A stretch of DNA of 64,000 nt from Antechinus flavipes (GCF_016432865.1 NC_067400.1:611878001-611942000), one strand, 5' to 3'; counted from the stretch's first letter, positions 28,171 through 56,400 are shown. Made by a program: numbers and translations. Notes: generated from the letters alone by a model not told the origin.

Positions 28171-28214
28171 GGCCTGGCGTGGGGCAGCAAGCGCAGGACC
28201 GGCGGCCGGGGAGA

Positions 28215-28320
28215 CCGGGGTTCAAGTCCCGCCTCGGGCACTGGCTGGCGAGTCACGTCACTTCTCCGGGCCTCAGTTTCTTCATCTGGAAAATGGGGAC
28301 GATGGCGCCTGTACTCCCTC
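28215..28320 (+). mobile_element. GC-enriched MIR/CORE-SINE remnant in the putative SDHAF1 5'UTR intron
   Basis: GGTTCAAGTCCCGCCTC..GTCAC.TC..CTCCGGGCCTCAGTTTCTTCATCTGGAAAATGGGGA. Confidence 0.7.
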
Positions 28321-29415: not shown

Positions 29416-29467
29416 TCAAGTGGAAAAATAGTCCTCGTGGTGGACAGGAGGGGGCGTCTTCTTCATG
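29416..29467 (-). CDS. FCGBP-like last coding exon
   Basis: Acceptor ctctgccatag; TG|C gives Cys, then [16 protein letters not shown]; poly(A) signal follows. Confidence 0.7.
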
Positions 29468-32400
29468 CTATGGCAGAGAGACAGAGATGGACAGACAGAG
29501 ACAGAAACAGANNNNNNNNNNNNNNNNNNNNNNNNNNNNNNNNNNNNNNNNNNNNNNNNNNNNNNNNNNNNNNNNNNNNNNNNNNNNNNNNNNNNNNNNN
29601 NNNNNNNNNNNNNNNNNNNNNNNNNNNNNNNNNNNNNNNNNNNNNNNNNNNNNNNNNNNNNNNNNNNNNNNNNNNNNNNNNNNNNNNNNNNNNNNNNNNN
29701 NNNNNNNNNNNNNNNNNNNNNNNNNNNNNNNNNNNNNNNNNNNNNNNNNNNNNNNNNNNNNNNNNNNNNNNNNNNNNNNNNNNNNNNNNNNNNNNNNNNN
29801 NNNNNNNNNNNNNNNNNNNNNNNNNNNNNNNNNNNNNNNNNNNNNNNNNNNNNNNNNNNNNNNNNNNNNNNNNNNNNNNNNNNNNNNNNNNNNNNNNNNN
29901 NNNNNNNNNNNNNNNNNNNNNNNNNNNNNNNNNNNNNNNNNNNNNNNNNNNNNNNNNNNNNNNNNNNNNNNNNNNNNNNNNNNNNNNNNNNNNNNNNNNN
30001 NNNNNNNNNNNNNNNNNNNNNNNNNNNNNNNNNNNNNNNNNGAAACAGAGACACAGTCAGAGAGACAGAGAGAGACACAGGGTCAGAGAGAGACAGAGAC
30101 AGAGACAGACAGATAGAGATAGAAACAGATAGACAGAGACACAGAATCAGAGAGAGAAAGAAAGACAGAGAGACACAGAGAGAAGGTAGGGTTAGTGGGA
30201 CGCGTGGGGGGCTAGATCATCTGCCGATCTGTTTGTCTGGGTCCTGGGAAGGGCCTTCTATATGGGAAGGGCCTCAGACATTGGACTCGGGGAGGGAGTC
30301 AGAAAAGAGAGAGAAAATTGGGGGATTAATTCCCTGGTAGGGAGATTATGGAGCTGGGGTCCCAAAAAGGGTTGGGCTAAAGGTATGGACATGTGGGAGG
30401 GTGAGATCTCCCTGGAGGGGAGATTATGCTCCTCACCATTGACTGAAGGTTTGAGCTTGACAGGACCGGAAGACGTCGTCCAGGCTAGTAGCAGGAAGCC
30501 CGCCCCTCAGGCGAAGGTCATCTCGGGGGTCCCCGTTGAAGTCACCACAGGCGGCTTGCAGCTGCCCACCCAGGGCTCGGGCAGCCCTCAGGGCCACGGC
30601 ACCTTTTGGCCCCACCAGCACCCGGAGAAGGGGCGGTCTCTCCACTAGGACCTTACCTGGCCCAGCCCAGCGGACCCTGACCCCTTTACAGACCTTCGCT
30701 GGGAGCTGGGCCCTGTGCCCGTTCACCTTCAGAGGAGAAAAGGAAGCTAAGGGGGCTGGCCGAGGAGGGGCCAGAATGCAGGTTCCTTGGGGGTAGGGGA
30801 AGATCGTGAGATAGGACAAAATCACAGGCCAGCTCTTCCCAGCTTTTATGCGGCCATTTGAAGTAGTGGACGTGGCCCATCGAGGTCTAGAAGAAGCACG
30901 ACTCATTGAGGGGTCGGTGACTTACCCAGACCTCCCTGTTGGGCCCCACAGCCACACAGCCGTCCTGGAAGCGGGTGGTGACCCATGCCTCTGGGGCGGG
31001 ACAGGCTGAGCAGGGCAGGTATTCTGTGACCACGTGGAACCAGGCAGGATCCTGGGGCTTGGCCCCGGTTAAGATGGTCAGCTCGTAGGCGCCCGGGGAG
31101 GCAAGGACAGGGACTCTGCCTTGGAAGCCGTCAAAGGTGGTAAAGAGGCCTCCGGGCACCAGGCGACAGGTGGCACTGCCCTTGCCCAGAGGCCCCCTGC
31201 AGCGGCGGACCCCCCGGTCCAGGACGCAGTCCAGGCCTTGGGGACACTGGAACGGCTGGCACCTTAGGTGACCCCCCGCTTGGCAGACGCAGCGTTCCCT
31301 GCAGCCTGGGAGGAGCAGCGTCTCACTCACCTGTGGGGAGGGCGCCGAGTCAGCCCGGGCCCTCCCTCTCCGATGACCCACTCACTCCTGCGGGGCAGCT
31401 GTTTCAAGACTCCCTTCTTTTCAGGGGCCCCACCTGTCTCTTAAAAGACCTGCGTTTGGAGATTTAGCCCAAATTCCCAAGGTTTAGAGCCTTGGATGGG
31501 GAGGGCTCATAAATCTAGTCCATTTTGCAGATGAACAAAGTGAGGCTGGAGGAAATTAAGTTATTTTATCAAGGTCACACAGGTAATAAGTGAACTTTTC
31601 TACCCTATCCTTGATTATCTCATTTACAAAATGGAGAATGATCCTTGTAATTTGAGGAAGGTGTTAGGAAGCCTTAGAAGGAAAACCTTAGAAGCCTATA
31701 ATCCCTGCTCTCTGGGGCAAATTACTTCTTTCTGCCTCAGTTTCCTCAAGTGCCAAGTGAGGATAATAGCACCTATCTCCCAGAGTAATTATGATGATCA
31801 ATTAAGGTTAAGCTCTTAGCACAATGCTTTGTATGTAGCAGACCATTCCCTTCTCAGGACCTTCCAGCTCTCCCTTGCCAATGTGTGCCTAAAACATGGG
31901 AGGTTTTCCACCTCCCAACAAGCCATCTTTTGTTATATAGGAAGGCTAATACATCTAGAGCCTGACTCTTTAGTTCCATCACAATTTGGTTTCTACCCTA
32001 ATCACCACCTGAAATGTCTCACTTTTTCATTTTTTTGGTGAATTGGGGTTATCTAAGTTTACACAGCTAGTAAGTGGTGTCAGAGGCTGAATTTGAACTC
32101 AGGTCCTCCCAACTGCTTTATCTACTGCCTCAATAATTGGAAAATTAATTGGTCCTTTTTCTTAAAAAAAGGTTCTATTGATAACATTTGTTTTTATCTA
32201 GGGGGTTATTTCCATCTCTCATTTAAGGAGCCCCTCTCTCATGACAAAGGAAAACAGGACTCACCAAAGCTGATGATGCTCCTGTAGTGAAAGGGAGGAG
32301 CTGCATCCTTCCTTTCCTCTGCCCCTAAATCACCCAGCTTGGTTTGGGATCATTTTTTGGCCTAGCCATCTCTCTCCCTTCTGGACCAGCCCGAGACATT

Positions 32401-35400
32401 GGAGCTCAGAAACCTGTTCATCAGCCACGTGGTTCCCAGGTCTTTGCCATCCCCAAAAGTGGATGCTCGGGATAATTCCAGCAGTCTCCGCTCCCAAACC
32501 TTGGGACACTGCTCCCACTTTGACCACACTGTGTTCCTGCCTCTTCCAGCATCACAGATGCCCCATGCACCTGATTCTCCTCCCTTTATAATCATTCCTC
32601 CGCCATTGTCTTCTCAGGCTTCCAGACCATTAATGGGGGTTTCCCCAAGTCTCTGTTATTTTTTCCCATAGGGACCCTAATTAGAGACCCATCAGGCCAA
32701 TTTTACAAATAAGGAAACCGAGTCCCAGGGAGGGGAAGTCTATTTCATAGACAACAAAGGTGTTTCTTCTATACCATTTTTAGATTTATGTCTGTCTGGG
32801 TTTAGGTCTTTTTTCCCTCCACACTCCCCACAATCTACAACTGGGGTCCTCAAACTACGGCCTGTGAGCCAGATGCGGCAGCTGAGAGCAATTACCCCCT
32901 CACCCAGGGCTATGAAGTTTATTTAAAGGCCCACAAAACAAAGTTTTTGTTTTTACTATAGTCTGGTCCTCCAACAGTCTGAGGGACAGTGAACTGGCCC
33001 CCTATTTAAAAAGTTTGAGGACCCCTGACTAGAAGCACACACCTAGATTGAAAAGATGGAGGCTATCTAGTCCGATTCCCCCTTCTTACACATTCAGCCT
33101 CCATTCTCCAACTCCCTGGATGGTTCTCAAAGCAATATCTTCAGCCCTGACCTCTCCTGTCCACCAGTCTGGCTTCATTAACTGCCTGTAAAACTCAGGC
33201 TCCGAGTGTCCCAAACCTAGATTATTATCCTTTTATTAGTTATCCAGGCTGCTCTTGGCTGCAGAACTGCCTCAGTGTACACATCCTAAAAGCACACGGG
33301 GGCTTGCCTGCACACACACGCGCCAGCCACCTTCCCCAGGGATTGGGGAACGGGTAAAAATAAGGGGCAATCCCCCCAATCGAGGAATGACTGATTAATC
33401 AAATGGGGTACACGATGTAATGGAATCTTAATATGCCTTAAGAAAGGAAGGATTCCCGAGAGAGAGAGCCTGGCAGAGGGAAAGAAACCGTATGTGAGAA
33501 GACAGCGATTGTATAAATGTAAAGAACAATAGCAAATAAAGGCTGAAATTGAATGCTCGGTAATTGTAGAGAGCAAGATGTGTGGGCTCCCTTGGAATAT
33601 GTGCCTCCCTTCATTTGGCAGGTCTGGGGTTGTAGGTGTGGAACGTCACATTATTGGATTCACTTGATCTATTGGTAGGCAGGTGAAAGTACTGGGATAA
33701 TAAAAAAAAAATCTATTTAACTTGCCAAAAAAATGAAAAAAAAATTTCATTATTGGATTTTTTTTTTCTCTTTGAAGACAATTTTTTATTACAGAGGATA
33801 ATTCATTGGGCGGAGGAGAGGGTGGGAAAGATTCAGAAATGAAGGTGGGAAAAAAGATCAATAAGTTTTTTTTTTTAATTGTATATATTCTTAATGGGTG
33901 GGAAGAGGGAGAGAATCTAAAGCTCAACGTTTTAAAAACGTTAAAAGTTTCTGGGGAAAATATCAAATCAAATAAAAAAACAGCCTTCAGAACTCTCAAA
34001 TGAGGTCAGAACCAAATTAAAGTAGAATTGGGAAAGTTTAACAAAATAAAAATACAATACAAAAAAATTTGTATGTAATGATTACACATATATAACCTAG
34101 AAGGGGGAGAGTGAAGGGAGGAAGAAAAAGATTTGGAACTTCAAAATCTTATTTAAAAATGAATGTTGATTGTCAATAAAAAGCTATGATTAAAAAAATG
34201 AATATTGAAAACCATATTTACATGTAATTGGGAAAAATATTAACTTACCAAAAAATTGTATGTTAGATGAGAAATAAGAGATACTAAGTGAGCTCTTCTT
34301 GATCGCTAAGAGGCACAGTGGAAAGAGTTAGACTTACAGTCAGGAAAAACGAGTTCAAATCCATGTAGCTGTGAGGCCCTGGGACCAGCCACTTCTGTTT
34401 GCATAACACCTCCTACTTCACAGGGTTGTAGATCAGTCGAGATAAGATTTGTGCACAGTGCCTGGCACATTGTAGATGCTATATAAATGCTAAAATAGGA
34501 GCAGCTAGATGGCGCAATAGAACACCAGCCCTGAAGTCAGGAGGACCTGAGTTCAAATCCAACCTCAGACATTTAACACTTCCCAGCTGTGTGACCCTGG
34601 GCAAGTCACTTAACCCCAATTGCCTCAGCAAAAAATAAATATATAAATAAATGCTAAGTTGGATATGATAATTATTCAAATATCTTTGATGATATTTCCC
34701 AACCCTTCTCTGATGAACCTATCAATAAAAGAACAGCTAATTCGGAAGGACTGCCACGTAGTAGGTACTATATACAATGCTAAGCTACTAGAATTATTCA
34801 GTTATCTTTCTCCATCCCTTCCCTGATGAACAACAAAAGAACAGCTAATTCGGATGGAATACTTAAGATTTCTAAATATTTTCCTACATCATCTCAGTTG
34901 ACCCAACTGGTTTTTCAGGTGCGCTCCCCTGTGAGCAGCTTTTAACTTCTCCATCACTTTCTCGAGAAAGATGACGAAGGAGTTGATTGCTTCTTTATAT
35001 GACATCAACTGGTGCTGAAAGCTGTTGCCGCAGAGAGTTCTGGGGACTCTGAAGTCACCCGTCACTCTGAAGCAACACATTGTGTTCCTATGAAGTCCTC
35101 CCTTTCTCAATGGCTCCTCCAAATGGAGATGGCAAAGCCAGGCTGAGCACAGCCTGGGTCAGGGTGTCCATCAGCATTTGTTGTCTGCTAAGTGAGCCGG
35201 TAATTCTGTATCTCTATTCTGATTTCATCAATAGAGATCATGGATGAACATCCATAGCCATAAGTTCTTCACACAGAGCATTGTGGGAAGAGTTCTGGAG
35301 CTGGAGCCTCTGGATTCATATTAGTGCACAGTGATCTTGTGCAAGGTAGTTCATCTTTGGGGGATGAGGGACCTGGTCTAAAGGGTCCCTTCCAGCCTTA

Positions 35401-38400
35401 ATCTGTGGCCTCTGAGTGAGGGAGTGAATCTTTCCCCTCCATAGCTAAAAATACTCACTTCTGCGCCAGACCCCAAGTGACAGTATAGCCCAGCTTACCA
35501 GCCTCAATTGCATATTCCCTTTGAAAGAACCATCCCTTAAAAGAAAAAAGGCGTTTACAAGTCCCGCTTACTTCACTTTGCATTGGGGCCTGCAAGCATG
35601 CATTTGAAAATGATACCTCCCTACCATGCTCAAATTCACAGGGAAATAGGCCAGTGACCAGGATACAGCAAGTGCTTAATAAATGCTTGTTGATTAAGTG
35701 ATTGATAGCTTCCTAGTAAGTTCCCCCCCCTCACTTTCCCTATTAATCCATCCTTATTTTTGCATAAGCTAACTTCTTCACACAAAAATCTATGTCATTT
35801 CTCCCTAATGGGATAAAATCTATTGCTTTCCAAGTAAAATCCACATTCAAGGACTGACATGATCTGGGGCCATCTTAGTGTAAGATTCTGTGACAACAAC
35901 ACTGAAACGCTAAGGTCCAATGCATTCTGGTCCCTCACTCTTCCATCCCTGTATTTTGGGTTCCACTCTCTCTCCTAGTTTTGTGACTTCAGAATCATCG
36001 CAGAATTCTCTCTCCATCACTCCATGGCTGATCAATTCTAATTCCACAACATGTGTCCCACATGTGTCTTCTCTCCACCTCTATCGCTGCTTCATCACCC
36101 ATCACCTGGACATCGTAGTAGCCCCAGATGCATCTTTCTGTTCCCAATCTCTCCCTCCCCCCCCATCCAGCCTCCATATAGTTGCCAAAATAATCTTCCC
36201 GATGTGCAAATCTGATTTTGTCTCTAAGCTGCTCAGAAAGACTAGAGACTTCCTATTGCTTTGAGAAAAAATACAGATTCAGCCTGGCATTTAAAGCCTT
36301 CCACAGTCTGTCTCCCACCAGTCTTATTTGGAGAATTCTATTCTGCTCAAACTGGAACACCAGCCATTCTGAACTTAGGTCCAAGCCCTATCTGGGATCT
36401 ATTTTTTCCTGGTTGTCTTTCCAAATCCAAAATGATACTTGGCTCTGGGAAATTTTCAATCAATTGTTCCAGGGACCTTTCATCTGAAATGAACATATTT
36501 CCTTTCTTAGGATAAGAGAATGTAAGCTCCCTTGAGGACTCTTTTGTCTCAGCATTTAGCACAGTGCATAGTAGGTGCTTAATAATAAATACTGAAATGA
36601 ACATATTTCCTTTCTTAGGATAAGAGAATGTAAGCTCCCTTGAGGACTCTTGTCTCAGCATTTAGCACAGTGCATAGTAGGTGCTTAATAAATGTTTTTC
36701 TGATTGGGTTTGCCCCTCCTGACTTCATGCTCTATGTCAGGGACACTATTATTTGTTTAAACTCTTTAGAGGCAGTTACGTGGCACATTGGATAGAACAC
36801 TGGTATCTGGAGTCAGAAAGATAAGTTTAAATTTGACTCCTGCAATTTAATAATTGTGTGACCCTAAGCAAGTCACTTCACCATCTTCTGCTTCAGTTTC
36901 CGCAATTGTAAAATGGGGATAATAACATTTATTTCCCAAGTCTGCAGTGAGAACCAAAGTAGATCATAGTTGTAAAGTGTTTAGCATAGTGACTAGCACG
37001 TAGTAGGTGCAATTTATTAAAAATGCTTGCTTCCTTCCTTCCGTGGCTATAATCTCGGTTTGATTTTTTCATGAAATTATTGCCCTACAGCTAGAAGAGA
37101 CCTTAGAGATGACCTCATCCAACCACTTCATTTTACAAATGAGGAAAGTGAAGGCCGTTGTCCGAGCCACAAAAATTGTAGGAGTCAAGAGAAGGGAGTG
37201 GAACCTCAGAAGACCTCCGATTCCAGCATCAGTGTTCTTTCTCTGCACCGTTACCCATGTTTTCCTCTTCCTTTCCACTCATCTCCAAACAATCAGTTCT
37301 CCCACTTCTGTCTTCTCTTATATTTTCTACCTGTTCCCAGTGCCATCAGCCCTCTAGCCACTAGCAGAGCTGCAGGGTGAGTAGGGTACAGTAAGTACTT
37401 ACATTGACTGATTATAATTGACTGCCATTCAAAGTCTGACAATTCTGGTGCCATTGTACCTTGCCAGTCTGATTCTCCTTTCACATATTTTGAACAAACT
37501 GGACAGCTCCTTGGCCATTGAACATAAACCAACAGTGCCCTGAGAGCTTCTGCTTTTGTGCCTGTTCTCCCCTATACTTAGAGTAAGCTTTTCTCCTCCT
37601 CTCTTTCTATTAAATCCCTCCCCATGTTTTAAGCTCCACTGGTTCCCAGTAACGTATTTCATGAGCCCCCACCAGTGTATAATCATTAACAAACAGCTGC
37701 TAGAAAGACAACTTTTAACAAAGGCATTTTCAAAGACGATATAGTGAGAATAGCTGTCACAAAACATTTTCCTCTACAACTAGGATGCATTCTGTCACAA
37801 ATACAGCATCCATGGGAAGATTGAGCTTAAACTCAGAGTACAGAAGTATTGAGGCACAGGTATAGGAAACAGGTGAGACAAAAGACAGCTCACAACTACT
37901 AGTAATATCACAAGACCTAGAACGCCTTTTTTTTTCCTTTTCTTTTTTTTCCCCTGAAACATCCTCATTCAGATTTCCTGGGGCATACTGTCTGTGCTTG
38001 GTAGGCTACCCAGCTAGCCTCCCAGAGCCTGTGCCTTTCTTGAGTTCATTTTTCTGTGCTGTGAGGGAGTCATCCCCTGGATGACTATTTTCTATATCCA
38101 TATCTCTTCTCAGTTATACGTCTCAGTTTTTGGCTGAATGCACTGTTTCTTACTGGTCCAGTAGCTCTGATAACATGATCGATGTGAGGAGAAGGAACTT
38201 GCTCTCCTGGCATGGAGCACTCCTGGATCCTGGGATTTTTAGCCGTGTGTAAAATGTAATTGCTGAACTTCATCCAGATATTTAATGCCCTGAAAGGAAC
38301 GACTGAATTGTTTGCTCAGCCAATCTCTTCATCCACTCAAGAGGTTCTCACATCATAAAGAGATCATGGGGCACAGATCCATCTTGTTTATGTGTTAAAA

Positions 38401-41400
38401 CATCACCATGTATAAAATACATTCTGTGCTCAACGGTAGCTAGGTACAGCGAGTGGATAAACTGCAGGATCCTGCAGTGCAGGATAAATCTACCCTCGGA
38501 CACTTACTAGCTACGTGACCCTCTTTGCCTCAGTTTCCTCAGTTGTAAAGTGAGGATAACAACAGGACCTATGTCTCAGGATTGTAATAAAGATCAAATG
38601 AGATAATATTGACAAAGCACTTAGCACAGTGCAGGGCACATAGTAGGTGTCTAAGAAATACTATTACATAATAATAAAATAAAAAAATCTGTGTATATAT
38701 CTATGTATGTCTATTGTTGTTATTATATAAATGCTTGTTTTCTTCCTGTAATCACATCATATAAACTGAGAATGGAGGGAGGGGGGAATCATAATCTGCC
38801 TTTCCTTATGCTTTAAGGGCTTGGAATATTTTCCTCCTTACCTTTGATTTTAAGATCCCCCGGTTCCTCCAAGACTCAAATGTCAACATTTCTGACAAAC
38901 ATCCTGCCCCCTTCCTAGTTGTTAATCACTCCCCTCCCCACCAACAAATCATCTGCTATTTCTTGAGTATCTACTCATATATGTACATATTGCCCTCCTC
39001 GTTGGGAAGTAAAGTCTTTGAAGCACAGGGCTTCGTACATAGCTGTGCTTAGTAAACGCTTGCTGACTGATAGAGGATTTAAGCCCAATTAAAACATTAC
39101 TTCTTCCAGAAACTTTCCTCAGTTTTTCCAGTTGGTTATGACCTCCCACCGGCCCCCATCAATAGGTTTTTAATTTTCTAATACACGTCTCATGTTTTGT
39201 CACATTTATAGCTCCCTCTATTTCTTTTTTTACTCTTTTTTTTGGGGGGGGGAGAAAATGTCAATTGGGGTTAAATGACTTGGGTCACACAGATAAGACG
39301 TGTTAAGTGTCTGAGGTCGGATTTGAACTCAGGTCCTCCTGACTTCAGGGCTGATGCTCTGTCTACCGAGACATCTAGTTGCCCCCAGCTATCTCTATTT
39401 TTGATATTTTCGATGCTTTTACCAAAACTGTAAACTTCTTGAAGGAACGACTGTAGTAGCTAAACCCTCTGCCTCCATTTTTTCACAGAAATACTTAGCA
39501 AATGAGTTGAATTGAGTAGGATCCTCTCCCCCAGCAGCCCCTGCTCACCAGAATGTAACGACCACGGTGGAAGCAGCCACATCGCTCCTGGGATACGCAG
39601 CCAGCCCCATTGTACACGAAGCCGGGGTCACATTCACAGCCCTCGAAGCACTGGGGTAAGCAGCGAGCAGGAGCCAGGAGAGGGACACAGCCAAGGTCAC
39701 ATGTCCGGGCACAGGTGCTGTAGTGACTCCGGGGTGGGCACCTCAGGGCTGAGGGCAGAAGGCAAGGATCAGTGGCACAGAGGCTCCCCGGGTGCCCAAC
39801 AGAACAACGTTCTAATTGCCTTCCCGTCTCTTCCCAGCCCTCTCTACTTCTCAGGAGCCAATCGATCCCTCCCCCTAGCTCTGGTCTCCTGCTCCCCTTC
39901 ACAGTCTTTCCTCAGGGTTGAGCTGCTCGACCATTTCTTCTCAGTTAATCCTTTGCTCTCCCAACTGCAAGGCTGGCTCACCCCTCCCTCCGCCCCCAAT
40001 CTGCCTCCTCTGCTCCGACACGTGAGCTGCTGAACGTGGCAATATGTCAACCTAACGGCAATAACAGAGAAATCGATAGGTTTCCTGGGGCATGTATCCA
40101 AGATCTAAGAGAGTACCTCTCAAGACCTGTCGAAATGGATGAATACTACCGACTGGTGGTGATTCAGGGGGCACAAATCATTCCAGAAGAAACCCAGAAA
40201 GTTCCCTCAAAGTATTTGCCAAAGGGAAAAGCTTGGATTAGAAGGGAAAGACCCTGGGGGTCATGGGTCTAGTTTTAATCACTTCTGGCCACAGAAGACA
40301 AAGATGGAGAAGAGAAAAATTGGAGCTGGAAAGCAAAGTTGGAAGATGGCGCCCAAGAATGGGATTTATGGTTTAAAATATGGAAATAATGTAGTCCTGG
40401 GCAGAGACGGAGGGAATTTGACTTAAAGTCAGAAAGAATGGGTTTGTTTATTGTTCTGTGAGTCTTAAAGTGAAAAAAGGAAGGGAGAGGGGGGAAAACT
40501 GACTATTAATTCACCAAAGTGGATCCCATAGAGTAGCTCGAGTGAAGAAGGAAGAGTGGCAGATGTCCCCAGACGACAAAATCCAAGAAAAGATCATGGA
40601 CCTCAAATGTCTATTGACAAACGCCCAAAGTTTAGTCAACAAGGAAGAGGAACTGGAAGTCCTAACATGAAAAAAGGCAAGTTTGACCTCACAGGTGCCA
40701 CAGAGACGGGAATATCACCTTGGAGTGCGCTGGAGCTTGGAGTGACTTGCAAGAGCCGATTGTTAAATTTTCCATGGCACTGGTTATACCTTGGAAATTA
40801 TCAGTACTTACAAATCGAGCTTGATTTATTTTCTAGACTTAAGAAAGTAATGGAGAATGTGTCAGTGATGCATGTTAAATTTAGAAGCGTGCCATGAGTA
40901 TATTCCCATCCCAAGAAAGCCAGTTGTTAAACACTTATCAGCCCATTTTGCCACACAGGCGAAGGGGGGCGGAAGCGATTCTAAATTAAGGAGGGGGACT
41001 TCTGCATTCCGGTCACACTGGCCTACCAGCTGTTCCACAAACACGGCCTGCGAACGCCTCTCTTTGTGCCCCAGTTCTAGAATGTTCTCCCTCCCTCCCT
41101 TCAGCCTCGGAGGTAATCGGAGGCCCCTGGGCTTCCTCCAAAGCCCAAGCCAAGCCTCTTCTCCTCCCTGATTCTCTCCGGTTGCTATTGTTCTCTCAGA
41201 TAAGTGGATCCGGAGGAGGTGGAATCATTAGAGCCAAAGTAGTCATTAATGACTCATGGCCAACGTGGAGGGACCCTGTGGATCTGCCCTTGGCCCTGAG
41301 CTCTTCCTTTTTAACAGTCACACAGCAGGAATGATCCGTTTGCACCTTGAATTTTCAGATGGCATAAAGCCAGGAGGATGACAAAAGGAAAAAAGTCAGG

Positions 41401-47400: not shown

Positions 47401-50400
47401 GGTCACACTGGCAGCCCTCGGCGCACTGGCCCGGGGTCTGGACGAGGGCTTGGAGGCCTGGGCAGGCAGCCGGGAAGGGGTCTGCACACAGGCTGTAGTG
47501 ACTGTGCTTGGGACAGTGCATGGCTGTGGGCACGGAGGTGGGAAGTCAGCTGCCAAAGAGTCCCGGGCTCCAGGGTCTCCCCCCCGGCCGGGGAGTCTCC
47601 CCTGGGTCTCCAGCCTCTCTGTCTGGGCCCCGACTCTGTCCTGGGTCCTGAACAGCCCGGCTCCAGCTCCTCTGGACTCCCAGCACCAGCCCTTCCACCC
47701 CACCCCAAAGGGCCAGCCCAGCCCCCAGCCCTGGTTCCCCCCGGCCCCCAGCCCTTGCTGCCGCTGCCCCCAAACTCACCGCAAAGCTTCGAGCTCCTCC
47801 AGGGCAGCACCTGGGCCCCTGCCTCCTGGCAGGCGGCCACGTAGCTCCTGAGACCGCTGCACAGGACACCGTGGCTCCCCCCGCCCCGGAGGACATCGGC
47901 CAGGCAGCTTTGGAAAAAGGGTTCTGGGGGCAAAGCCCCGTGGCAGGGGGCAAACGGGCCCTCGGCGGCCAGCAGGATCCCGCAGGAGTCGGGCCCCCGG
48001 AACGGGGCGCTGGCGGCCTCCCCCATGGAGGGGCAGCCGGGACCGGGGCAGGGCTGGGGCAGAGGGCAGGGCCGGAAGCCGAGGTCTGGGCCCAAGGACG
48101 CGAGGTCGTCTGCCCCGTCGCCGTTGTAATTCCCACACAGCCCCAGCGTGTGGCCCTGGTAAGCAGCAGGCAGAGCCAGGTTGAGGTGCGGGCCCTGGCT
48201 CAGGACCAGGCGGGGCCCTTCCTGGATCACGAGCACCATTGAGGACCCCTGCGTGAAGGCTCGGACGCCCCCGCCAGGCAGTTCAAAGGGGAGACAGCAT
48301 CGTACTCCATCCACCTGCGGTTAGGAAAGAGATGGGGTGGGAGAGACTCCCTGAAACTGGGGAACACTCCGGGGGCTGCACTAGGTCCGGGAGGAGAGGA
48401 AGGAGAAAAGGCGAGGAGGGAGGTGAGGGAAGGGAGTCGGGAGGAGGAGGAAGCACCGATGACAAATGGATGCACCTGAGACTGAGACACGTAGGAATGA
48501 TCCCCAGAGATCCAGCTGGAGAAAGAGGCTGGGGCCCCCAGAGACCTCAGGCCCTCCCTGGGATGCTCACCCGCTTCATCCCTGGCAGCCTCAGAGCCCT
48601 TGGTCCTGCCCTCTCTCCAGCCCCCAAGGCCCTCGGGCTGCCGGGGATGGCCCACTCACCATCACGTAGCCCCAGTCCCCGCGATCGAGAACAAAGTGGC
48701 ATCCGGCCGCAGCGAGGGTCACGCGGTTGACGTCAGCCCCGTAGGGCCCGTTATCCACCAGCACTGAGAAGGGCGGGAGGCTCGCTGGGCAGCTGGGGGC
48801 TGTGCTGGCCAGGGGGTAGGAGCAGTGCCCACCGAGTCGGAAGATGGTGCCATCAAAGGTCCGGCAATGAGAGCCGCCAGAGATCAGGCAGAGCCCCGGG
48901 CTGGAGCCTGCAGGGCCAGGGGCAGCCTCGGGGGCCTTACAGGGGCAGAATATACGGCCTCCAGCCTGGCAGATGCAGGGGCTTCTGCACGATTCCCCCC
49001 AAACCCCCGGGAGCTGGAGGCCCGGCTCGTAGTAGTGGCCAGAGAGGAGGCAGCCACACTGGTGCAGGGGCACGCAGGCTGCCCTGCTCAGCACAAAGCC
49101 GGGGTCACACACACATCCCTCTCGACACGGTCCGGCCTGGCAGCCTGCGGGCCCCGAGAGGCTCCCGCAGGTGACTGGGCAAGCTGGCCCACACAGCTCA
49201 TAGTGGGAGTGAGCCGGGCATGGCGGGTCTGTGGGGAGGAAGGCCGAGTGAGTGAGCGCTATCTGGGCATCCCCCCTTCCCTCTGAAGTCAGGTGCCCAC
49301 TGAAGTGGGTCCTGGGGGGATGGGGGCCTAGATGTTTGATCTAAAGGTCAGTTCCCCGAGTCACTGAGGAGACAAAGACAAGGGGCCCAAGTCCCTTGGG
49401 GCTGAGGGCCCAGCTGCCAGGCTCTGCACTCACGGCAAAAGTCTGAGGTCCTCCATGGGTAGATGAGGATCCCCTCCTCCTGGCATGCAGCAGCATAGTC
49501 CGCGATGATGGGGCAGGCGCCTCTCCCGGGGATGAGGCAGGCATCCCGGACGCAGGCTTCAAAGTAGCCCTGGGGGAGCAGCTTCTGATGGCACAGCCGG
49601 AAGGGTCCGTCGCGTGCTATGAGACTGTGACAGCCTCCAATGGCCCCCTGGCACTGGCCAATGGTGTGCTTCCAATTGTCATCGATCTCTTCTCTGCAGT
49701 CCTGGACAGTTCCCATGCGGCAGCTGTAGACCAGGGCCAGGGTACCAGACAGGTCAGAGGCCAGGGGGTATCCCAGCATGGGAAGCAGGTCGTTGGTCGG
49801 GTCTCCGTCATAATTCGCACAGAGACCGACCACTTGTCCTGCGTAGCTCTTGGGCAGGGCCAGCACCAGGTGGCTGCCCCCATCGAAGGCCACTTCCAGG
49901 CCAAAGGAACAGCTCACGACGGTGTTCCACCCCCTGCGGAAAACCAGGACGCGGGTGCCCAGCTGGCAGGGAAGGTTCCTCCACGCCCCATTCACCTGCA
50001 CATGTAGGGACAAAGGTCATGTCAGGGAAGACAAGGAGAGAGACCCAGGAAACTATGGTGGGGTGGAGATAGAGAAGGAATCTAGGGAAAGACAGAGAAC
50101 AGGCGAGGGAGACAGAGACAGCAAAACACTTGGAGACAGCAAAAGACAGAGCCATAGAGTGGGGGGGGAGGGGGGGAGATAGTGAGAGGCATAGAGATAA
50201 GGGGGGAGAGAGGCAAGAGGAGAAGGAAAAAGCCATACAGAGAGATGGGGAGACCCAAGGAGAGTGTGGGAGACACTTGGAAAGAGAGAGACACAGGAGA
50301 GAAAGAAAGGAGACAGNNNNNNNNNNNNNNNNNNNNNNNNNNNNNNNNNNNNNNNNNNNNNNNNNNNNNNNNNNNNNNNNNNNNNNNNNNNNNNNNNNNN

Positions 50401-53400
50401 NNNNNNNNNNNNNNNNNNNNNNNNNNNNNNNNNNNNNNNNNNNNNNNNNNNNNNNNNNNNNNNNNNNNNNNNNNNNNNACCAAAGTGGGGCAGGGCAGGT
50501 GGACCAAGAGACCAAGCCGCAAGGAGAAAAAAAGGAGCAAGAGGAGGGCGGGGCTGGGTTCCAGGGTCCAGAAGCCCCGTCGGCCCGGGGAGCCCTCCAT
50601 GTCTTACCAGAACCCTGCCAAACTGGCCCTGGTCCAGCCGGACATGGCCTCCGGGCACAAAGACCTCGACCCCTCTCGGGTGCCCGGCAGGCCCGGCGTT
50701 GAAGAGGACGCGGAAGGGGGTCAGGGGCTGCTCCCCGATTCGGCCGTAGCTCCTGAGGCCGCTGAGCAGATAGCTGCAGGAGCCAGAGAAGCGGTAGCGG
50801 TGGCCATCAAAGGTCTCGAAGTGGCCCGCGCCCGCGGCTCGGCAAGTACCGCTCCCGGCGGCCTGGCAGCCGCGCACGCCCCCCGTCACGGCGCAGTGCT
50901 CGCTGGGCCCGCAGCCCGCCTCTCGGCAGTGAGCCTGGCCCCCGCCGGCGGGGCACCAGCAGCGTCGGCCACAGCCCGGGCCCCTCCAAAGGGCTTCCCC
51001 GGGCGCCAGGAGCAGCCCCTCGAGGCGGCAGCCGCAGCCCGGGCCGTCGCGCCGCACGCACGTGGGGCCGCTGCGCACGAAGCCGGGGTCACAGGCGCAG
51101 GTCTCCAGGCAGGGCAGCGGGCACCGCTGGGGGGGGTCTCCCTCCCGGTCTGCACACGTGGCCGGGCAGGCGGAACCGCAGGGCTCATAGTGGCTGTTGG
51201 GTCCGCAAATCCGTGCTTCAGAGACAGAGGACACAAAGAGGGACGGGGATGAGTCCCTTCATCGCTCCCAGAGGCCCAAGAGCCGCGCGCCTCCGGCCTC
51301 CCATCACCCGGGGTCCGAGAGCCTCTGCCTGATTTCCTAGGACCCGCAACCCTCGGCCCCGCCACCGGCCCCGGACCCAGAATCCTCGGTTTCGGACGCG
51401 GAAGGAGTCTAGGAATAGCAGCCCACACTAGGGCTCCTTCACACTGGGCTTTAAGATGCGCCACAGTGACGGGACCGTTAAAGCTCCGCAGTTCAGGCCC
51501 TTCCTTGCTGGACAGCTCCGCTGCTGGGAGGCTGCTCTGGTAGCTGCAACTGCCTCCCTAATGCGCTGCCCCCGCCGGGTACTTCCTTCTCTGAGCCAAG
51601 ATCCTGCCTCCAACACTCTCAGGCCTGCGCCCCCACCCCCATCCCAAGCTTTCTCTTCTCCTGGCCAAAGAACCTTAGTTCCTCCAACTAATTCTTACAC
51701 AGTCATTTCCCCTGCCGGCCCTTCTAAAGCACGGCTCCTAAAATGAAAATACCCTTCTAGATGGGCTTGGAACAGGGCAGAGGGCAAAGGGGACCTCCTC
51801 ATCACTTGGCCTCCAGTGACCCAAGCACGATTTCCTGTTTGGACTGTTTTATTCCGCTCACACTTGGCTTGGTGTTACAATAGATAGAGGGGATCTGGAG
51901 TCAGGAGGACCTGAATTCAAATGTGACCACAGACACTTCCTAGCCGTGAGATCCTAGGCAGTCACTTAACCTGGTTTGCCTCAGTTTCCACAACTGTAAA
52001 ATGAGCTGGAGAAGGAAATGACAAACCCATCTAGTAGCTTCACCAAGGAAACCCTAAATGGGATCAGGAGAAGTCAGATATCACAGAAAAGTGACTAAAT
52101 AAAAATTAGCTGAAAGCCAATTTAACCCCACCAGACCTTTCACAGGATCTGACCTCCTGTTGGACTTGTTCTATTCTGCAATTGGGAAGCTGACTTTTTG
52201 AACCTAAGTCAAGGACTTCAGGTTTCATTCATTATTTTATTAAATGTAAATTTAATATTATCAGATTGGCCCCAGAATTCTAACTTGTTGCCTGGTTAGC
52301 TTAAGTTTTTAATATCCAGAATCTCTCCTATCTCTCAGCTTTGTGTCATCTGCAAACTTAATGAAAAAGAAAGGATGTGAAGGAGAGGGGAGATAGAGAT
52401 ATAGAGGAAAAGAGAAAAGGAGAACAGACTAGGAAAACAAAAAGAGGGAAGGACCCAAATTAATGCACAAATGTTAATCTCTGTTTTATATTATCTGCAA
52501 ATTTAATGAAAAAGAAAGGAAGTGAAGGAGAAGAGGGGGAGATAGAGCTATAGAGACCCCAAATTAACCCACAAATATTATTAGCATTTTATACAAAAGT
52601 AAAAACCTAGAAAGAAGTAATAATAGAAACTATTTAAAGTAACTTTAAAGTGCATAAATAATTAGGAGTTTTACCTACTTAGAAACATTCAAGATTCATA
52701 TAAATATAACTATAGAACCCTTTATAGGAAGAGAAATAATTGGAGAAATATTCGTGACGCATGGGAGATAGGAAGGAGAGGAGACTGGGAAGAGGAAGAT
52801 GGGGAAGTAACCCTCGGAGCTTTTTTGCCATCTAAAACTTTGATAGGCATCCCATAAATTCTTTCATTCAAGTCACTTGAGTACTAAGAAGCTGGCCACT
52901 TCCCTCCTGGTCCAGGTCAAAGGAAGTCCCGCCCACTACTTAGGATCCACTGCCCACTGGCTCAAGGCAAATCCTAGTTTCCTTAGCCCGACCTAATTGG
53001 CCTTGCATCCCAAAAGATCCCAAGGTCCAGGATCACGATATATTTGTGCCAAGACCCCCGTGCACTTACAGCAATAGGTCACGAGCCTCCAGAGGCCCAG
53101 GGGTACTGCCTCCCGCTGACAGGCATGGGCATACGTCTCCAGCTCTCGACAAATCACCGGTCTATAGCCAGGAAAGGCACAAGCCACTTCCAGGCAACTG
53201 AGTACAAAGGGCTTGGGGTCCAGGAGCGGGTGGCAATTTCCAAAGGGGCCCTTCGGGTTTTCCATGAGCATACACGCTCTCATCTCCTGCCCCCCAGGTC
53301 TCAAAGTGCACTGAGACCTCCACTGTGAGTAGCAGGGGTCATCCTTCGGCTCCAAGGCCCAAGCTTGGGCAAAAAGTCTGACAGAGGCAGAGGAACCAGA

Positions 53401-56400
53401 TATCCCAGGGCTCGAATCCAGGATAGGGCCCTGCTGTGTGAGGCTCAGGTCATCTGCTGGATTCCCGTTAAAGTTCCCACAGAGGCCCCGAACATGGCCC
53501 CAGTACCCACCAGACACTTTAAGAGACAAGGCTTGCTGCCAGTCATAGATCAGGCGGAAAGCAATCTGAGGTCCCAGTCCCATGCTGGTCCCAACTCTTA
53601 CCCTTGCCTTGGCTCCTGTTGCAATCTCTGATATGGTCCAGCTACTTGACGGTACCTCTGCCCCTGTCTGGGCTATAGTCCCAGATCCTGTTGTTTCTTG
53701 TGTCTTGGTTTCAGTCCAAGTCCCAGCCCCTGCTATGGGCTCAGTATCAGTCCCTATCCAAGGCTCAGACCCTGACTCGGGGGAAGCCCCGGCAGCTGTC
53801 CATGTCTCGGGCCTGATTCCTGCCCCTGCATTAACTGCAGCCTCTTCCATGGCTGTGGTCCCTGTCCCCGTCCAGAATCTGGACCCTGTCTCTTGCCCTG
53901 TCACTGTGGTCCCAATTCCTGACCCGGTTACTGCCTCAGCCTGGACCTCAGCCCACAGCTCAGTCCCGCGGTAGTAGAGTCGAAGCTTCCCGTTTGCCAG
54001 GATCACCGGTAGCCGGACTCTCTGCTGGTCGACCTGGGGGGAGACCCGTTTGTGAAGGACCCGAGAGCCTTCAGGAAGAGGGGCTGAGCAGGGGCTCTGG
54101 GGAGTCGTCCTAGTAAGGGACTGATTCCCTGCTCTCCGAGAAAGGAAGGGGAGCGGGTCACAGATACCTGGGAGGACAGACCGGACACCCAGGCCCTTAC
54201 CCTGACGAAGCCGTATTCGTTTTTGGCAGCAGTGATCATGTAGCCGAAAACACTCAGGGTGACGTGGCGGAAGGGCAGCTGGCCCCCGCTGCCACCAAAC
54301 CACACGTGGAAGGCTGGGAGCCCTGCTCCGGTGACTCCTTGAAGACAGCGACACACTATGTACGTACAGGCTCCTGGTACTGCAAAGGATTGCCCGTCGA
54401 AGGTGTGAAAGTAGGGGAGTCCCGAAGCCCAACAAGTCCCTGTGGCTGCAGCTTCAGACCCAGGCTCAGCTTCAGGAAAATCCTCAGCAACTATGATAAG
54501 ACCCAAGGTCAGATCCCCCCTCAGGAACCTTCATGGATTCCAGGCACAATTCCTCAATAGACGCCACTCCATACCCAAGCCCAGGTTCTGACACAGATCC
54601 CCCCAAGGACCCAATTTTGGATTGTGACACAAAGGCGGCAATGGGCCCAATCCCGGGTTCCAGTCCTGGCTGGTGCTCTGATTCAGACTCACCCAAGGGT
54701 CCACCCACAACAATAGGTCCTGGTATAGACTGCCCCAGGGCCTCTGCCACGGGCCCTGCTGCAGCCACAGTTTCCGAGATGGCCTCAGGTTTGCTCACAG
54801 CTCCTGAAGCTGCCACTTGCGCAGACAAAGGCTTAGACTCAATGACAGTCACAGGTTTGGCCACAGCTTTAGCCATAGCCCCTGGCAGCCTTTGGGGCAC
54901 ACACCGAGGGACGTTGTTCACCAGGCGACACGATGTACCCTTGCTGCAGAAATAATTCTTGCAGGTTGGGGAGTAGACAGAAGGATGCAGAAGAAAAGGA
55001 TGCGGGGGAGGCCGTGGCGATGGGGGCTGGGAATGAGGGAAGCGGTCGGGGAGGGGCAGAGTGAGGGAGTCCACTTGGGGAAGGGTCTTGGGCTGAGGGT
55101 GGGGCAGAGAGAAGAACCCAGAGAGGGGATCGGGATCTGACATCTGTGGAGAGTGAACCAAGGAGCTGAAAGCTTGCAGATGTTCCGAAAGAGTCCTAGT
55201 TTGGAGAACTGTCAGGGAGGAGAGGAAACAGCTGGAGGGAGAGTGGGATCCAGGTGCCCAATTAAAAGCTCCTCTGCCTATCGGGATTGTGCACCCCAAA
55301 CCCTCAGAGACACAGAGTCCCGCAGGGGCTGGGCTCCTCACCTCCCCATGGGACTCAGATATCCCCTCCCTTCCTAGTTCCCAGCCCCTGTGGGCTCACC
55401 TCTCCCTGGGACTCAGATGTCCCCTCCCCACCAAGTTTCCAGCCTCTGAGGGCTCCTCACCTCCCCGTGGGACTCAGCAGTCCCTTCTCTCGCAGTCCCC
55501 AGCCCCCATGGGCTCCCCACTTCCCACTGGGACTCGGCCCAGCCCTAGCCTCTCCATAGGCTGGGAGCCCGGCTCACCAGTCGGCCTCTCTGCCTGCGTT
55601 CCAAAGCCAGAGTTCGCTGAGGTCCCGCAGCTGAGGACCCCTATGACTTGGCCCCTGAGAGTCTCCAGCCGGTGGCTGCCTTTGTCTCCAGTGCCAAAGG
55701 GGACCTCCGCCCAGGAGAAGTTTTCGTTTCCACAGGGAATGAGCCGCCAGGTCAAGTGGGTCAGCGGCCGCTTATCCAGCAGCACCGAGCCCGGCACGGG
55801 ACCCTCTCCGGAGGCCACGAGCAGCGCCACGTTGGAGAAGCCCGGCAGCTCAATCAGGGAGAAGCTGGAGCCGTAGGAGTCCTCGGACGGCACCTGCGCA
55901 AACCAGGGGTCGTAGACCACGCCCTGCCGAGACCCAACCCCGGCCAAGAACAGCACCTGGAGCTCCACCGAGGACTGGAGCGCAAGGGGCCTGCGCCAGT
56001 CCACCTGGAACCGCAGGACCCGGCCGGGATCCAGCAGCCGCTTGCCCCGGGTCCCGCCCCTCCAGAAGTCCAGGTGGCCCTCGCTGTCCGCCACGACGTA
56101 GACGTAGTCGGAGGAGCTTTTCGTCCCGGGATCCCGCGTGGCAAAGGGAGGCACGGCGTAGACGCGGCCCCAATGGCCCGCGGGCAGCAACTGCTCGCAC
56201 ACAAGCTTGCAGTCGCGGCCCGCGGGCAGGCAGCTGTGGCCCGCGATCAGCGCCACGGGGTGCTCGGCGCTCACCACGGTCCCCGACAGGTTCCTTTCGC
56301 TTTGCACCTGCACCGCCCCGAAGGGCTCCAGGACGACGTCCAGGGGCTGTCTGGCCTCGTGGGTCACGTTGTCCAGAATCACGAGGCCCGGGGCGATCAT

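What the first reader, a model, noticed from the sequence alone, without database searches (positions are those of the whole stretch)
31100..54440. Every GDPH autocatalytic cleavage site is replaced, each by a different substitution
Seen: the VWD starts read [40 protein letters not shown] and C-RLV-PGGL. Established: internal VWD domains of FCGBP carry GDPH and self-cleave between Asp and Pro, forming a reactive anhydride that may cross-link; the terminal VWD normally lacks it. Inference: five different losses, with the flanking Cys and TF(D/G)G kept, suggest selection for a non-cleaving single-chain protein and so a different function.
Basis: partly seen in the sequence, partly recalled or inferred. 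Interest (0 to 1): 0.8.

Follow-up and report, generated by a model that had tools for sequence, protein, structure and literature searches.

The report
FCGBP-like paralogue without self-cleavage sites
This marsupial gene is an old duplicate of the mucus protein FCGBP, also kept in dogs and seals, that has lost every self-cutting GDPH site yet is still preserved by selection, so it is a natural uncut form of the protein; the loss is ancient and only moderately surprising.

Summary
Six VWD domains on the minus strand begin with GLPY, GAGH, GGSH, GNFR, GPAH and PGGL where GDPH would be. The preceding Cys and TF(D/G)G are kept.

The gene has 18 exons (57152-29416, about 3,060 codons) and lies between LRFN3 and SDHAF1. 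It is not FCGBP itself. It is a sister paralogue of eutherian FCGBP, with orthologues at the same locus in Sminthopsis, another marsupial and caniform carnivores.

None of these orthologues has GDPH, and the replacements largely match: GLPY, GPAH and PGGL recur unchanged in the carnivores. The losses therefore predate the marsupial-placental split.

At most four losses are specific to this gene. The fifth domain best matches FCGBP's penultimate VWD, which already lacks GDPH in amniotes. The last matches the terminal VWD, which never has it.

Both flagged N gaps are intronic. The gene is under constraint: dN/dS is 0.41 against Sminthopsis and 0.36 between seal and jackal, with no stop codons and about 98% of cysteines kept. 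One +1 base near 54499, in a low-complexity linker, is the only frame break; a candidate internal intron would bypass it.

Non-cleavage is well supported by inference. Selection specifically for non-cleavage is not shown.

The scan had already noted this gene as intact, on this same stretch.

The parts
29416..57152 (-). Whole gene: 18 exons and about 3,060 codons. It encodes a secreted FCGBP-family protein: signal peptide, IgGFc_binding N-domain, linker, five VWD-C8-TIL(-TILa) assemblies, one extra TIL-TILa, a terminal lone VWD and a tail.
   Evidence: Exon-by-exon mapping from the Sminthopsis CDS, with AG/GT kept at all 17 introns; Pfam hits.
57101..57152 (-). Exon 1: start codon and signal peptide.
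   Evidence: translation.
55578..56849 (-). Exon 2: IgGFc_binding N-terminal domain.
   Evidence: PF17517, E = 1e-41.
54201..55208 (-). Exon 3: low-complexity linker with an EGF-like Cys knot, then the first half of VWD1.
53070..54033 (-). Exon 4: second half of VWD1 (with a Thr/Gly-rich insert) and C8.
50608..51215 (-). Exon 5: TIL-TILa of assembly 1 and the first half of VWD2.
49434..49995 (-). Exon 6: second half of VWD2 and C8.
48660..49228 (-). Exon 7: TIL and the first half of VWD3.
47780..48314 (-). Exon 8: second half of VWD3 and C8.
47093..47523 (-). Exons 9 (47324-47523, TIL) and 10 (47093-47234, TILa). Together with the TIL in exon 11, this gives two TIL units between VWD3 and VWD4, a likely remnant of a lost ancestral D4 assembly.
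46070..46722 (-). Exon 11: TIL and the first half of VWD4.
44744..45281 (-). Exon 12: second half of VWD4 and C8.
43580..44160 (-). Exon 13: TIL-TILa and the first half of VWD5.
42507..43056 (-). Exon 14: second half of VWD5 and C8.
39549..39748 (-). Exon 15: TIL.
30926..31330 (-). Exon 16: TILa and the first half of the terminal VWD6.
30437..30726 (-). Exon 17: second half of VWD6.
29416..29467 (-). Exon 18: C-terminal tail and stop codon. It carries the Cys that aligns with the FCGBP dimerising tail Cys.
54411..54422 (-). VWD1 motif GLPY in place of GDPH.
   Evidence: Identical in both other marsupials and, in the carnivores, in all four protein models that include the VWD1 start.
50821..50832 (-). 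VWD2 motif GAGH.
   Evidence: Carnivores have GGGH. It aligns on the GDPH of mouse FCGBP.
48867..48878 (-). VWD3 motif GGSH.
   Evidence: This is the most variable site among orthologues: AGPY and DGLR.
46277..46288 (-). VWD4 motif GNFR.
   Evidence: GDFR in the other marsupials and GDFH in carnivores; the Pro-to-Phe change is shared.
43775..43786 (-). VWD5 motif GPAH.
   Evidence: GPAH in carnivores and GPTH in the other marsupials. This domain best matches ancestral D6, which is GGIH in eutherian FCGBP.
31145..31156 (-). Terminal VWD6 motif PGGL.
   Evidence: This domain falls in the D7-type clade at 100/100 support, a type that never has GDPH.
54496..54501 (-). One extra base relative to Sminthopsis. 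It is the only frame break in the gene and sits in the linker, about 65 nt before the VWD1 Cys.
54491..54692 (-). Candidate internal intron (GTGAGT ... ATAG, 202 nt). It contains the extra base and restores the reading frame. The same sites in Sminthopsis span 183 nt, which is also in frame.
   Evidence: with the alignment. Inference only; no RNA data.
44187..44321 (.). Assembly gap inside intron 12, flanked by a CT-rich microsatellite.
50317..50478 (.). Assembly gap inside intron 5.
29512..30041 (.). Assembly gap inside the last intron (intron 17).
27799..28221 (-). SDHAF1 (LYR protein), the downstream neighbour.
   Evidence: Pfam Complex1_LYR. It is the same neighbour in Sminthopsis, Phoca and Canis.
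63480..63983 (-). 3' end of LRFN3 (FN3, transmembrane segment, tail), the upstream neighbour.
   Evidence: ORF, named LRFN3 from my own reading of it, not from a Pfam or BLAST hit; an LRR/Ig/fn3 gene sits upstream in Phoca and Canis.

Best explanation
The window carries a functional, secreted member of the FCGBP family that is not FCGBP. It is a paralogue that arose from an FCGBP-like 7-VWD gene in the mammalian stem lineage, and it sits between LRFN3 and SDHAF1 in marsupials and caniform carnivores. After the duplication the copy evolved fast. It lost the VWD-C8 of one assembly, leaving an extra TIL-TILa, and lost the Gly-Asp-Pro-His turn in every VWD that had one. No VWD now has the Asp-Pro bond, and the Gln that hydrogen-bonds the Asp in FCGBP D10 is also gone. 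The Asp-driven autocatalytic hydrolysis therefore cannot take place. The protein should leave the cell as one uncut chain with no Asp-anhydride intermediate (inferred, not shown). The rest of the D-assembly is kept: cysteines, C8, TIL and an FCGBP-like predicted fold. The two cysteines that make the FCGBP C-terminal dimer are also kept, so a disulfide-linked homodimer is likely (inferred). The motif losses were complete before marsupials and placentals split, and the new residues have mostly been conserved since. The simplest cause is that cleavage became dispensable in the duplicate and the motif decayed early. Whether the loss was positively selected cannot be told from these data.
For: Architecture: Pfam hits. 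Closest solved relatives are mouse and human FCGBP, with GAGH aligned on GDPH. An AF2 model of the Sminthopsis D4 assembly has pLDDT 85, and its best fold match is mouse FCGBP 8rde at TM 0.86. Orthologues and synteny: Sminthopsis (82-93% amino-acid identity, all 18 exons and splice sites matched); Phoca and Canis aureus loci show LRFN3 - gene - SDHAF1; the window has the same neighbours. Paralogy: in the N-domain tree the clade (100/100) is sister to eutherian FCGBP (100/98), with a stem branch of 1.24 against 0.62, and Carnivora appears in both clades. Shared loss: motif table. Constraint: dN/dS is 0.41 (CI 0.36-0.47) over 3,028 codons, with 0 stops against about 22 expected under neutrality, 202 of 207 Cys kept, and in-frame indels apart from one +1 base in the window and a local 1+2-nt pair that nets to 3. 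Seal against jackal gives 0.36 (0.30-0.42), with 159 of 161 Cys kept. Cleavage chemistry: D4080A, D4080N and H4082N abolish cleavage, and Q4094 mutants reduce it (PMC10880436). Dimer cysteines are conserved (PMC11796319).
Against: One +1 base in exon 3 breaks the frame in this assembly if exon 3 is read as in the Sminthopsis model. The rescue by an internal intron is only a prediction. There is no transcript or protein evidence for this species. The only protein hint is a single low-scoring peptide in dog saliva (PMC6279226). dN/dS of about 0.4 is relaxed for a structural protein. One-to-one orthology of D1, D3 and D5 to FCGBP domains is unresolved: they cluster with each other amid composition warnings. 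The sister relation to eutherian FCGBP joins two long branches, and no marsupial FCGBP proper was in the data set.
Confidence: 0.72

Rival explanations
1. Adaptive loss. Non-cleavage was positively selected in each VWD because an uncut single chain serves a new function.
For: Every GDPH that could be lost is lost. The replacements are then conserved for about 160 My; GLPY and GPAH are identical in marsupials and carnivores. The gene is under purifying selection in two lineages. The post-duplication stem branch is long, which is compatible with a burst of change.
Against: A four-residue motif in which single substitutions at Asp or His were shown to abolish cleavage, and Pro supplies the scissile bond, is expected to vanish under mere relaxation on a branch of about 1.2 changes per site. 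GDPH is lost piecemeal in many family members with no sign of a common cause. No branch-site test could be run. Later conservation of the new residues only shows that the turn is structurally constrained.
Confidence: 0.2
2. The copy in this genome is a young pseudogene. The +1 base at about 54499 is real and disabling, and the intact look of the rest reflects recent inactivation.
For: The frame break is present in the assembly. The gene is patchily retained among mammals: only marsupial and caniform full-length proteins were found, plus a rhino fragment.
Against: It is the single lesion in 9.2 kb. All 34 splice dinucleotides are kept, there are no stops, and the other indels preserve the frame. 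The break lies in a variable low-complexity linker, inside a candidate intron that keeps the frame in both this species and Sminthopsis. An assembly error is also possible. Even if true, this would not change the reading of the motif loss, which is ancestral.
Confidence: 0.12
3. The protein is still cut near these turns, by another route such as a protease or a different labile bond.
For: Nothing was found here. It cannot be excluded from sequence alone.
Against: There is no Asp-Pro at or next to any of the six turns. Natural VWDs without GDPH are described as uncleaved, namely FCGBP's two C-terminal VWDs (PMC11796319).
Confidence: 0.04

Closest known systems
FCGBP (IgGFc-binding protein; human 13 VWD, mouse 7 VWD; PDB 8rde, 8r0t, 8qci)
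   Same: It shares the IgGFc_binding N-domain, serial VWD-C8-TIL-TILa assemblies, a lone terminal VWD with a tail, and both dimerising cysteines. FCGBP gives the best sequence and fold matches.
   Different: It is a separate locus and clade. It has six VWDs plus an orphan TIL-TILa. No GDPH is present at all, whereas FCGBP cleaves all VWDs except the last two. The dasyurid form has a long low-complexity linker and a Thr/Gly-rich insert in VWD1.
The two C-terminal VWDs of FCGBP (mouse D6/D7, human D12/D13)
   Same: They are natural, uncleaved FCGBP VWDs. Eutherian D6 reads GGIH and gecko D6 reads GGSH, the same type of replacement as GAGH, GGSH and GPAH here. D7 is the same type as the window's VWD6.
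   Different: In FCGBP they are the exception within a cleaved protein. Here the whole protein is of this kind.
Xenopus laevis IgGFc-binding protein XP_018083858.1 (P0174) and other family members with partial loss (Leptodactylus, Phrynosoma, Alligator)
   Same: They are FCGBP-family proteins in which GDPH is absent from all or many VWDs.
   Different: They are independent, non-mammalian lineages and not orthologous to this gene. None has been studied, as far as the searched literature shows.
Engineered uncleavable FCGBP D10 (D4080A, D4080N, H4082N)
   Same: The chemical consequence is the same: no Asp-Pro hydrolysis. The window's VWD4 (GNFR) carries the same Asp-to-Asn change as D4080N.
   Different: The mutants are less stable and more protease-sensitive than the cleaved wild type. 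The natural paralogue has had over 100 My to compensate, and whether it has done so is unknown.
Rodent Fcgbpl1 (9530053A07Rik)
   Same: It is another FCGBP-like paralogue in mammals with VWD, EGF-like and TIL domains (PMC1449887).
   Different: It lies in tandem with Fcgbp on mouse chromosome 7 and is noted in prostate, which is a different locus.
N-terminal D assemblies of VWF and gel-forming mucins (MUC2, MUC5AC, MUC5B)
   Same: They are VWD-C8-TIL assemblies that function uncleaved, and they give the next-best sequence and fold matches.
   Different: They are much more distant (about 22-26% identity in the fold-search alignments). The gene here has no PTS mucin domain, no CK knot and no IgGFc_binding-less architecture.

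Membership tests
FCGBP family (broad) | N-terminal IgGFc_binding domain (PF17517) | tested here: met
   E = 1e-41, profile positions 2-292 of 297.
FCGBP family (broad) | Serial VWD-C8-TIL(-TILa/E) assemblies ending in a lone VWD with a short tail | tested here: met
   Pfam hits on every exon. The terminal VWD groups with D7-type domains at 100/100.
FCGBP family (broad) | Closest solved relatives by sequence and fold are FCGBP | tested here: met
   8rde scores 1160 bits against 231 for VWF. Foldseek TM is 0.86 to 8rde.
FCGBP family (broad) | C-terminal dimerising cysteines (mouse C2462 and C2581) | tested here: met
   Both columns hold Cys in the window, Sminthopsis and three carnivores. Dimer formation itself was not tested.
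FCGBP orthologue (the gene itself) | Falls in the same clade as eutherian FCGBP | tested here: not met
   It forms a separate 100/100 clade that is sister to eutherian FCGBP, and Carnivora is present in both clades.
FCGBP orthologue (the gene itself) | Genomic position of FCGBP | tested here: inconclusive
   The gene lies between LRFN3 and SDHAF1 in four species. That FCGBP lies elsewhere is from my own knowledge of the human and mouse maps and was not checked here.
Autocleaving (GDPH) VWD domains | Gly-Asp-Pro-His in the turn between beta-strands 1 and 2 | tested here: not met
   It is absent from all six VWDs here and from all orthologues.
Autocleaving (GDPH) VWD domains | Actual cleavage of the chain | not testable with these tools
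   This needs reducing SDS-PAGE or mass spectrometry.
Gel-forming mucins | Long PTS domains, CysD domains and a C-terminal cystine knot | tested here: not met
   No such Pfam hits were found. There is only a Thr/Gly-rich insert of about 130 aa within VWD1.
Zonadhesin | MAM domains, a mucin repeat and a transmembrane anchor | tested here: not met
   No MAM domain was found, and the protein ends in a short soluble tail.

The most novel reading that the evidence does not exclude
Therian mammals ancestrally had a second FCGBP-type gene, at LRFN3-SDHAF1, that was remodelled into an obligately uncut single-chain dimer. All autocleavage turns were replaced and then frozen, one assembly was deleted, and lineage-specific mucin-like inserts were gained. 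It serves a distinct secretory role, possibly salivary as hinted in dog, and has been lost in primates and rodents. It would be a natural control for what GDPH cleavage is for.
Probability: 0.25. Interest if true: 0.55.

Novelty: new variant of a known kind. Interest (0 to 1): 0.38.

Why it matters
The purpose of GDPH self-cleavage in VWD domains is still open; the authors of PMC10880436 say so. This gene is a natural, selectively maintained FCGBP-type protein in which cleavage has been switched off in every domain for more than 100 million years, while the cysteine framework and dimer cysteines remain. Comparing it with FCGBP could show what cleavage contributes and which substitutions compensate for its absence; useful comparisons are stability, protease resistance, VWD-C8 orientation and the tissue of expression. 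The gene also documents an unstudied mammalian gene, known only from automatic annotation as IgGFc-binding protein-like, that is retained patchily in marsupials and caniforms. The result is not a new kind of system. Uncleaved VWDs are common, and piecemeal GDPH loss is frequent in the family.

Tried and rejected
1. Treating the gene as the FCGBP orthologue was rejected by the N-domain tree and by synteny.
2. Neutral decay was rejected by dN/dS, the absence of stops, and cysteine and splice-site retention.
3. Coding sequence hidden in the two flagged gaps was rejected. Both gaps are intronic, and Pfam profile coordinates are contiguous across them.
4. One-to-one orthology of each VWD to FCGBP D1-D7 could not be shown by tree. 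Only D6-to-D7 is firm. D2 and D4 sit in the D2/D5 polytomy. D1, D3 and D5 cluster together, with composition warnings. BLAST colinearity (D1, D2, D3, -, D5, D6, D7) is the only support.
5. The representative search with the N-domain returned no mammalian FCGBP in its top 150. Mammalian FCGBPs were obtained only through a later search on the D4-D5 region.
6. Two N-domain searches for more orthologues found only marsupials and caniforms. These searches are limited by length and by shared words, so absence elsewhere is not shown.
7. The hedgehog LOC107523584 (P0166) has the N-domain but no VWD by my model, and was left out.
8. Literature searches for a described FCGBP paralogue lacking GDPH found nothing relevant.
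9. The dog saliva peptide does match the jackal orthologue exactly. It is a single peptide with a very low score, so it is a lead only.
10. No codon branch or branch-site model could be run with the tools at hand.

Full report
**Observation.** They are [40 protein letters not shown] and C-RLV-PGGL. Each follows a Cys and precedes TFDG, or TFGG in the fourth. Pfam places a VWD start (profile position 1) at the first four sites. The fifth start is called by my own VWD model, and the sixth rests on alignment to FCGBP D7. Pfam also finds C8, TIL and TILa after the starts, and an IgGFc_binding domain (E = 1e-41) upstream. The only GDPH string in the region is in a non-coding frame.

**Gaps.** These were tested first, as the scan's program asked. 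I rebuilt the Sminthopsis crassicaudata CDS exactly (9,198 nt, 18 exons) and mapped every exon onto the window.
- Gap 44187-44321 lies in intron 12. Exon 12 ends at 44744, and exon 13 starts at 44160 behind a pyrimidine tract and cag.
- Gap 50317-50478 lies in intron 5. Exon 5 ends at 50608 and exon 6 starts at 49995.
- Pfam profile coordinates run on across both gaps: VWD 1-73 then 75-151, and C8 1-67 then TIL 1-55.
- A third gap (29512-30041) is in the last intron, and exon 18 is found just beyond it.
- The gaps sit in CT-rich microsatellites. No coding sequence is expected in them, and I did not try to fill them.

**Gene model and integrity.** The gene runs from 57152 to 29416 on the minus strand. 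All 17 introns keep AG and GT. Exon nucleotide identity to Sminthopsis is 85-95%. Every exonic indel is a multiple of three, with two exceptions.
- A pair of 1 and 2 nt in exon 13. Here the window has the canonical reading and Sminthopsis is the odd one out.
- One extra base near 54499 in exon 3, inside a low-complexity linker about 65 nt before the VWD1 Cys.

Read as in the Sminthopsis model, that base breaks the frame, and it is the only lesion in 9.2 kb. A candidate internal intron (donor GTGAGT at 54692, acceptor ATAG ending at 54491, 202 nt) contains the extra base and restores the frame. The same sites in Sminthopsis span 183 nt, which is also in frame. This is a prediction only. An assembly error or a very recent lesion are the alternatives. 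The read-through translation, with X at the break, is 3,059 residues with a signal peptide.

**Identity of the gene.** The neighbours are SDHAF1 downstream and the 3' end of LRFN3 upstream. Earlier notes of the scan place THAP8 and NFKBID further out. A whole-library search with the N-domain found one close relative, at 63% identity; everything else was at or below 50%, and full-length matches at or below 37%. Word-indexed searches named the following relatives, all labelled IgGFc-binding protein-like:
- Sminthopsis crassicaudata;
- a second marsupial entry (UPI0000D90EC8);
- four caniform carnivores: Callorhinus, Leptonychotes, Phoca and Canis aureus.

The Sminthopsis, Phoca and Canis loci have SDHAF1 immediately downstream, and the two carnivore loci show an LRFN3-like gene upstream. 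This is therefore a conserved therian gene at LRFN3-SDHAF1.

In a maximum-likelihood tree of the N-terminal part, these sequences plus a rhinoceros fragment form a 100/100 clade. That clade is sister to eutherian FCGBP (100/98), inside amniote FCGBPs. Carnivora occurs in both clades, so the two are paralogues. The stem of the new clade is twice as long as that of FCGBP, 1.24 against 0.62 changes per site. One caveat is that two long branches meet at this node, and no marsupial FCGBP proper was in the set.

**Age of the GDPH loss.** None of the orthologues has GDPH, and the replacements correspond across species.

| VWD | Window | Other marsupials | Carnivores |
|---|---|---|---|
| D1 | GLPY | GLPY | GLPY |
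| D2 | GAGH | GAGH (Sminthopsis; start missing from the other model) | GGGH |
| D3 | GGSH | GGSH, AGPY | DGLR |
| D4 | GNFR | GDFR | GDFH |
| D5 | GPAH | GPTH | GPAH (GRAH in Phoca) |
| D6 | PGGL | PGGL (Sminthopsis; model of the other ends before D6) | PGGL (LGGL in Canis aureus) |

The losses therefore predate the marsupial-placental split. Most of the new residues have been conserved since: 14 of 20 motif positions are identical between the window and carnivores, against 49-65% identity over the assemblies as a whole.

**Number of independent losses.** Canonical 7-VWD FCGBPs of fish and frogs have GDPH in D1-D6. Eutherians have it in D1-D5, with GGIH in D6 and none in D7. Reptile D6 reads GGSH, AGSH or GDSH, and a turtle paralogue still has GDPH there. 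This agrees with the published statement that all but the two most C-terminal VWDs are cleaved (PMC11796319; PMC8267560).

BLAST of the window's assemblies against three such proteins gives a colinear best match: D1, D2, D3, (none), D5, D6, D7. The PDB search shows the second assembly matching mouse D2 best. The two TIL units between VWD3 and VWD4 fit a deleted ancestral D4 VWD-C8.

The domain tree firmly supports only VWD6 as D7-type (100/100). D2 and D4 fall in the D2/D5 polytomy, and D1, D3 and D5 cluster with each other under composition warnings. My reading is as follows.
- The terminal VWD never had GDPH.
- The fifth VWD may have inherited a non-GDPH turn.
- At most four losses are specific to this gene.
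- Their full independence is not proven.

**Constraint.** The window against Sminthopsis gives dN = 0.074, dS = 0.18-0.20 and dN/dS = 0.37-0.41. The bootstrap 95% interval is 0.36-0.47 and never reaches 1. Further measures:
- 853 random substitutions on the same CDS give a mean of 22 stops, and never fewer than 9 in 1,000 trials; none is observed.
- 202 of 207 cysteines are conserved, against 85% identity for other residues.
- Seal against jackal gives dN/dS = 0.36 (0.30-0.42) over 2,478 codons, with no stops, in-frame indels only in exons 3-15, and 159 of 161 cysteines kept.

The constraint is moderate: strongest in exons 12-13 (about 0.14) and weakest in the linker and VWD1 (about 0.6).

**Mechanism.** GDPH cleavage is started by the Asp side chain attacking its own carbonyl. 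In FCGBP D10, D4080A, D4080N and H4082N abolish cleavage, and Q4094A/E reduce it (PMC10880436). The window's five turns have Leu, Ala, Gly, Asn and Pro at the Asp position, and none keeps Asp-Pro. Sminthopsis and carnivore D4 keep Asp, but it is followed by Phe. The residue aligned with Q4094 (the Q of FQG) is Pro, Ser, Gly, Pro and Leu/Ala. The chain should therefore stay uncut and form no Asp-anhydride. This is inferred, not shown.

The fold is kept. An AlphaFold2 model of the Sminthopsis D4 assembly, which is 91% identical to the window's, has mean pLDDT 85, with about 90 over the first ten residues. Its best structural match is mouse FCGBP 8rde, at TM 0.86 and 45% identity. Both cysteines that make the FCGBP C-terminal dimer (mouse C2462 and C2581) are conserved in the paralogue. 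A disulfide-linked homodimer is therefore likely (inferred).

Engineered uncleaved D10 is less stable and more protease-sensitive. Whether this paralogue has compensated for that is unknown.

**Cause of the loss.** On a stem branch of about 1.2 changes per site, a motif in which single changes at Asp or His abolish cleavage is expected to disappear as soon as cleavage is no longer needed. GDPH is also lost piecemeal in many family members, and completely in a Xenopus laevis FCGBP. Relaxation after duplication is therefore sufficient. Positive selection for an uncut chain is possible but not shown, and no branch-site test could be run here.

**Novelty.** The gene is known only from automatic annotation. 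Full-text searches found no paper on an FCGBP paralogue at this locus or on one lacking GDPH. Rodent Fcgbpl1 is a different, tandem paralogue. A single low-scoring peptide assigned to IgGFc-binding protein-like in dog saliva matches the jackal orthologue exactly (PMC6279226). That is a lead for expression, not evidence.

**Verdict.**
- This is a new variant of a known kind, of moderate interest as a natural uncleaved counterpart of FCGBP.
- The scan had already noted this gene as intact, on this same stretch.

Noticed in passing
window 54491-54692 (-), extra base near 54499: There is a +1 base relative to Sminthopsis in the linker of exon 3. It lies inside a candidate GTGAGT...ATAG intron that would keep the frame in both species (202 nt here, 183 nt there). 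It could be an exitron-like alternative intron, an assembly error or a real lesion.
   Followed up: partly
window 53566-53964 (-), inside exon 4: A Thr/Gly/Ala/Glu-rich insert of about 130 residues with spaced Trp lies between the two halves of VWD1. It is coding in the Sminthopsis model too, with five in-frame indels between the two species. It is very short in the other marsupial model and absent in carnivores, so it is a dasyurid expansion, possibly an O-glycosylated stretch.
   Followed up: partly
window 46900-47523 (-), exons 9-11: Two TIL(-TILa) units lie between VWD3 and VWD4. Together with the colinear BLAST pattern that skips ancestral D4, this looks like the remnant of a deleted VWD-C8.
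   Followed up: partly
window 29416-29467 and 30926-31330 (-); alignment: The terminal VWD and tail keep both cysteines that form the FCGBP C-terminal dimer. They also carry several extra cysteines not present in FCGBP D7.
   Followed up: partly
L001 (Sminthopsis) exon 13, CDS positions about 7426-7441: Sminthopsis has a local 1+2 nt frame disturbance that replaces the conserved HEAC-A-RGG stretch of a TILa and removes one Cys. The window and the other marsupial keep the canonical reading.
   Followed up: no
window 44322-44420, 50100-50316 and 30042-30216: All three assembly gaps in or next to the gene are bordered by CT-rich (TCTC/TGTC) microsatellites in introns. The matching Sminthopsis introns 5 and 12 are about 0.9-1 kb longer, so the gap lengths are probably underestimates.
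   Followed up: no
L003 (Canis aureus) 20202-24010; L002 (Phoca) 35930-40134: Automatic annotation splits the carnivore orthologues. Assemblies D2/D3 in jackal, and the terminal VWD in seal, are called as separate genes. All exons are nevertheless present and in frame, so the published protein lengths (2,170-2,744 aa) understate the gene.
   Followed up: partly
PMC6279226, table of dog saliva proteins: [quoted passage not shown] The identification score is very low.
   Followed up: partly
window 42000-51000: The coding part of the gene is 60-70% G+C, and the proteins are rich in Gly, Ala, Arg and Pro. The tree tool flags their composition as deviant, which may distort the placement of domains D1, D3 and D5.
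   Followed up: no
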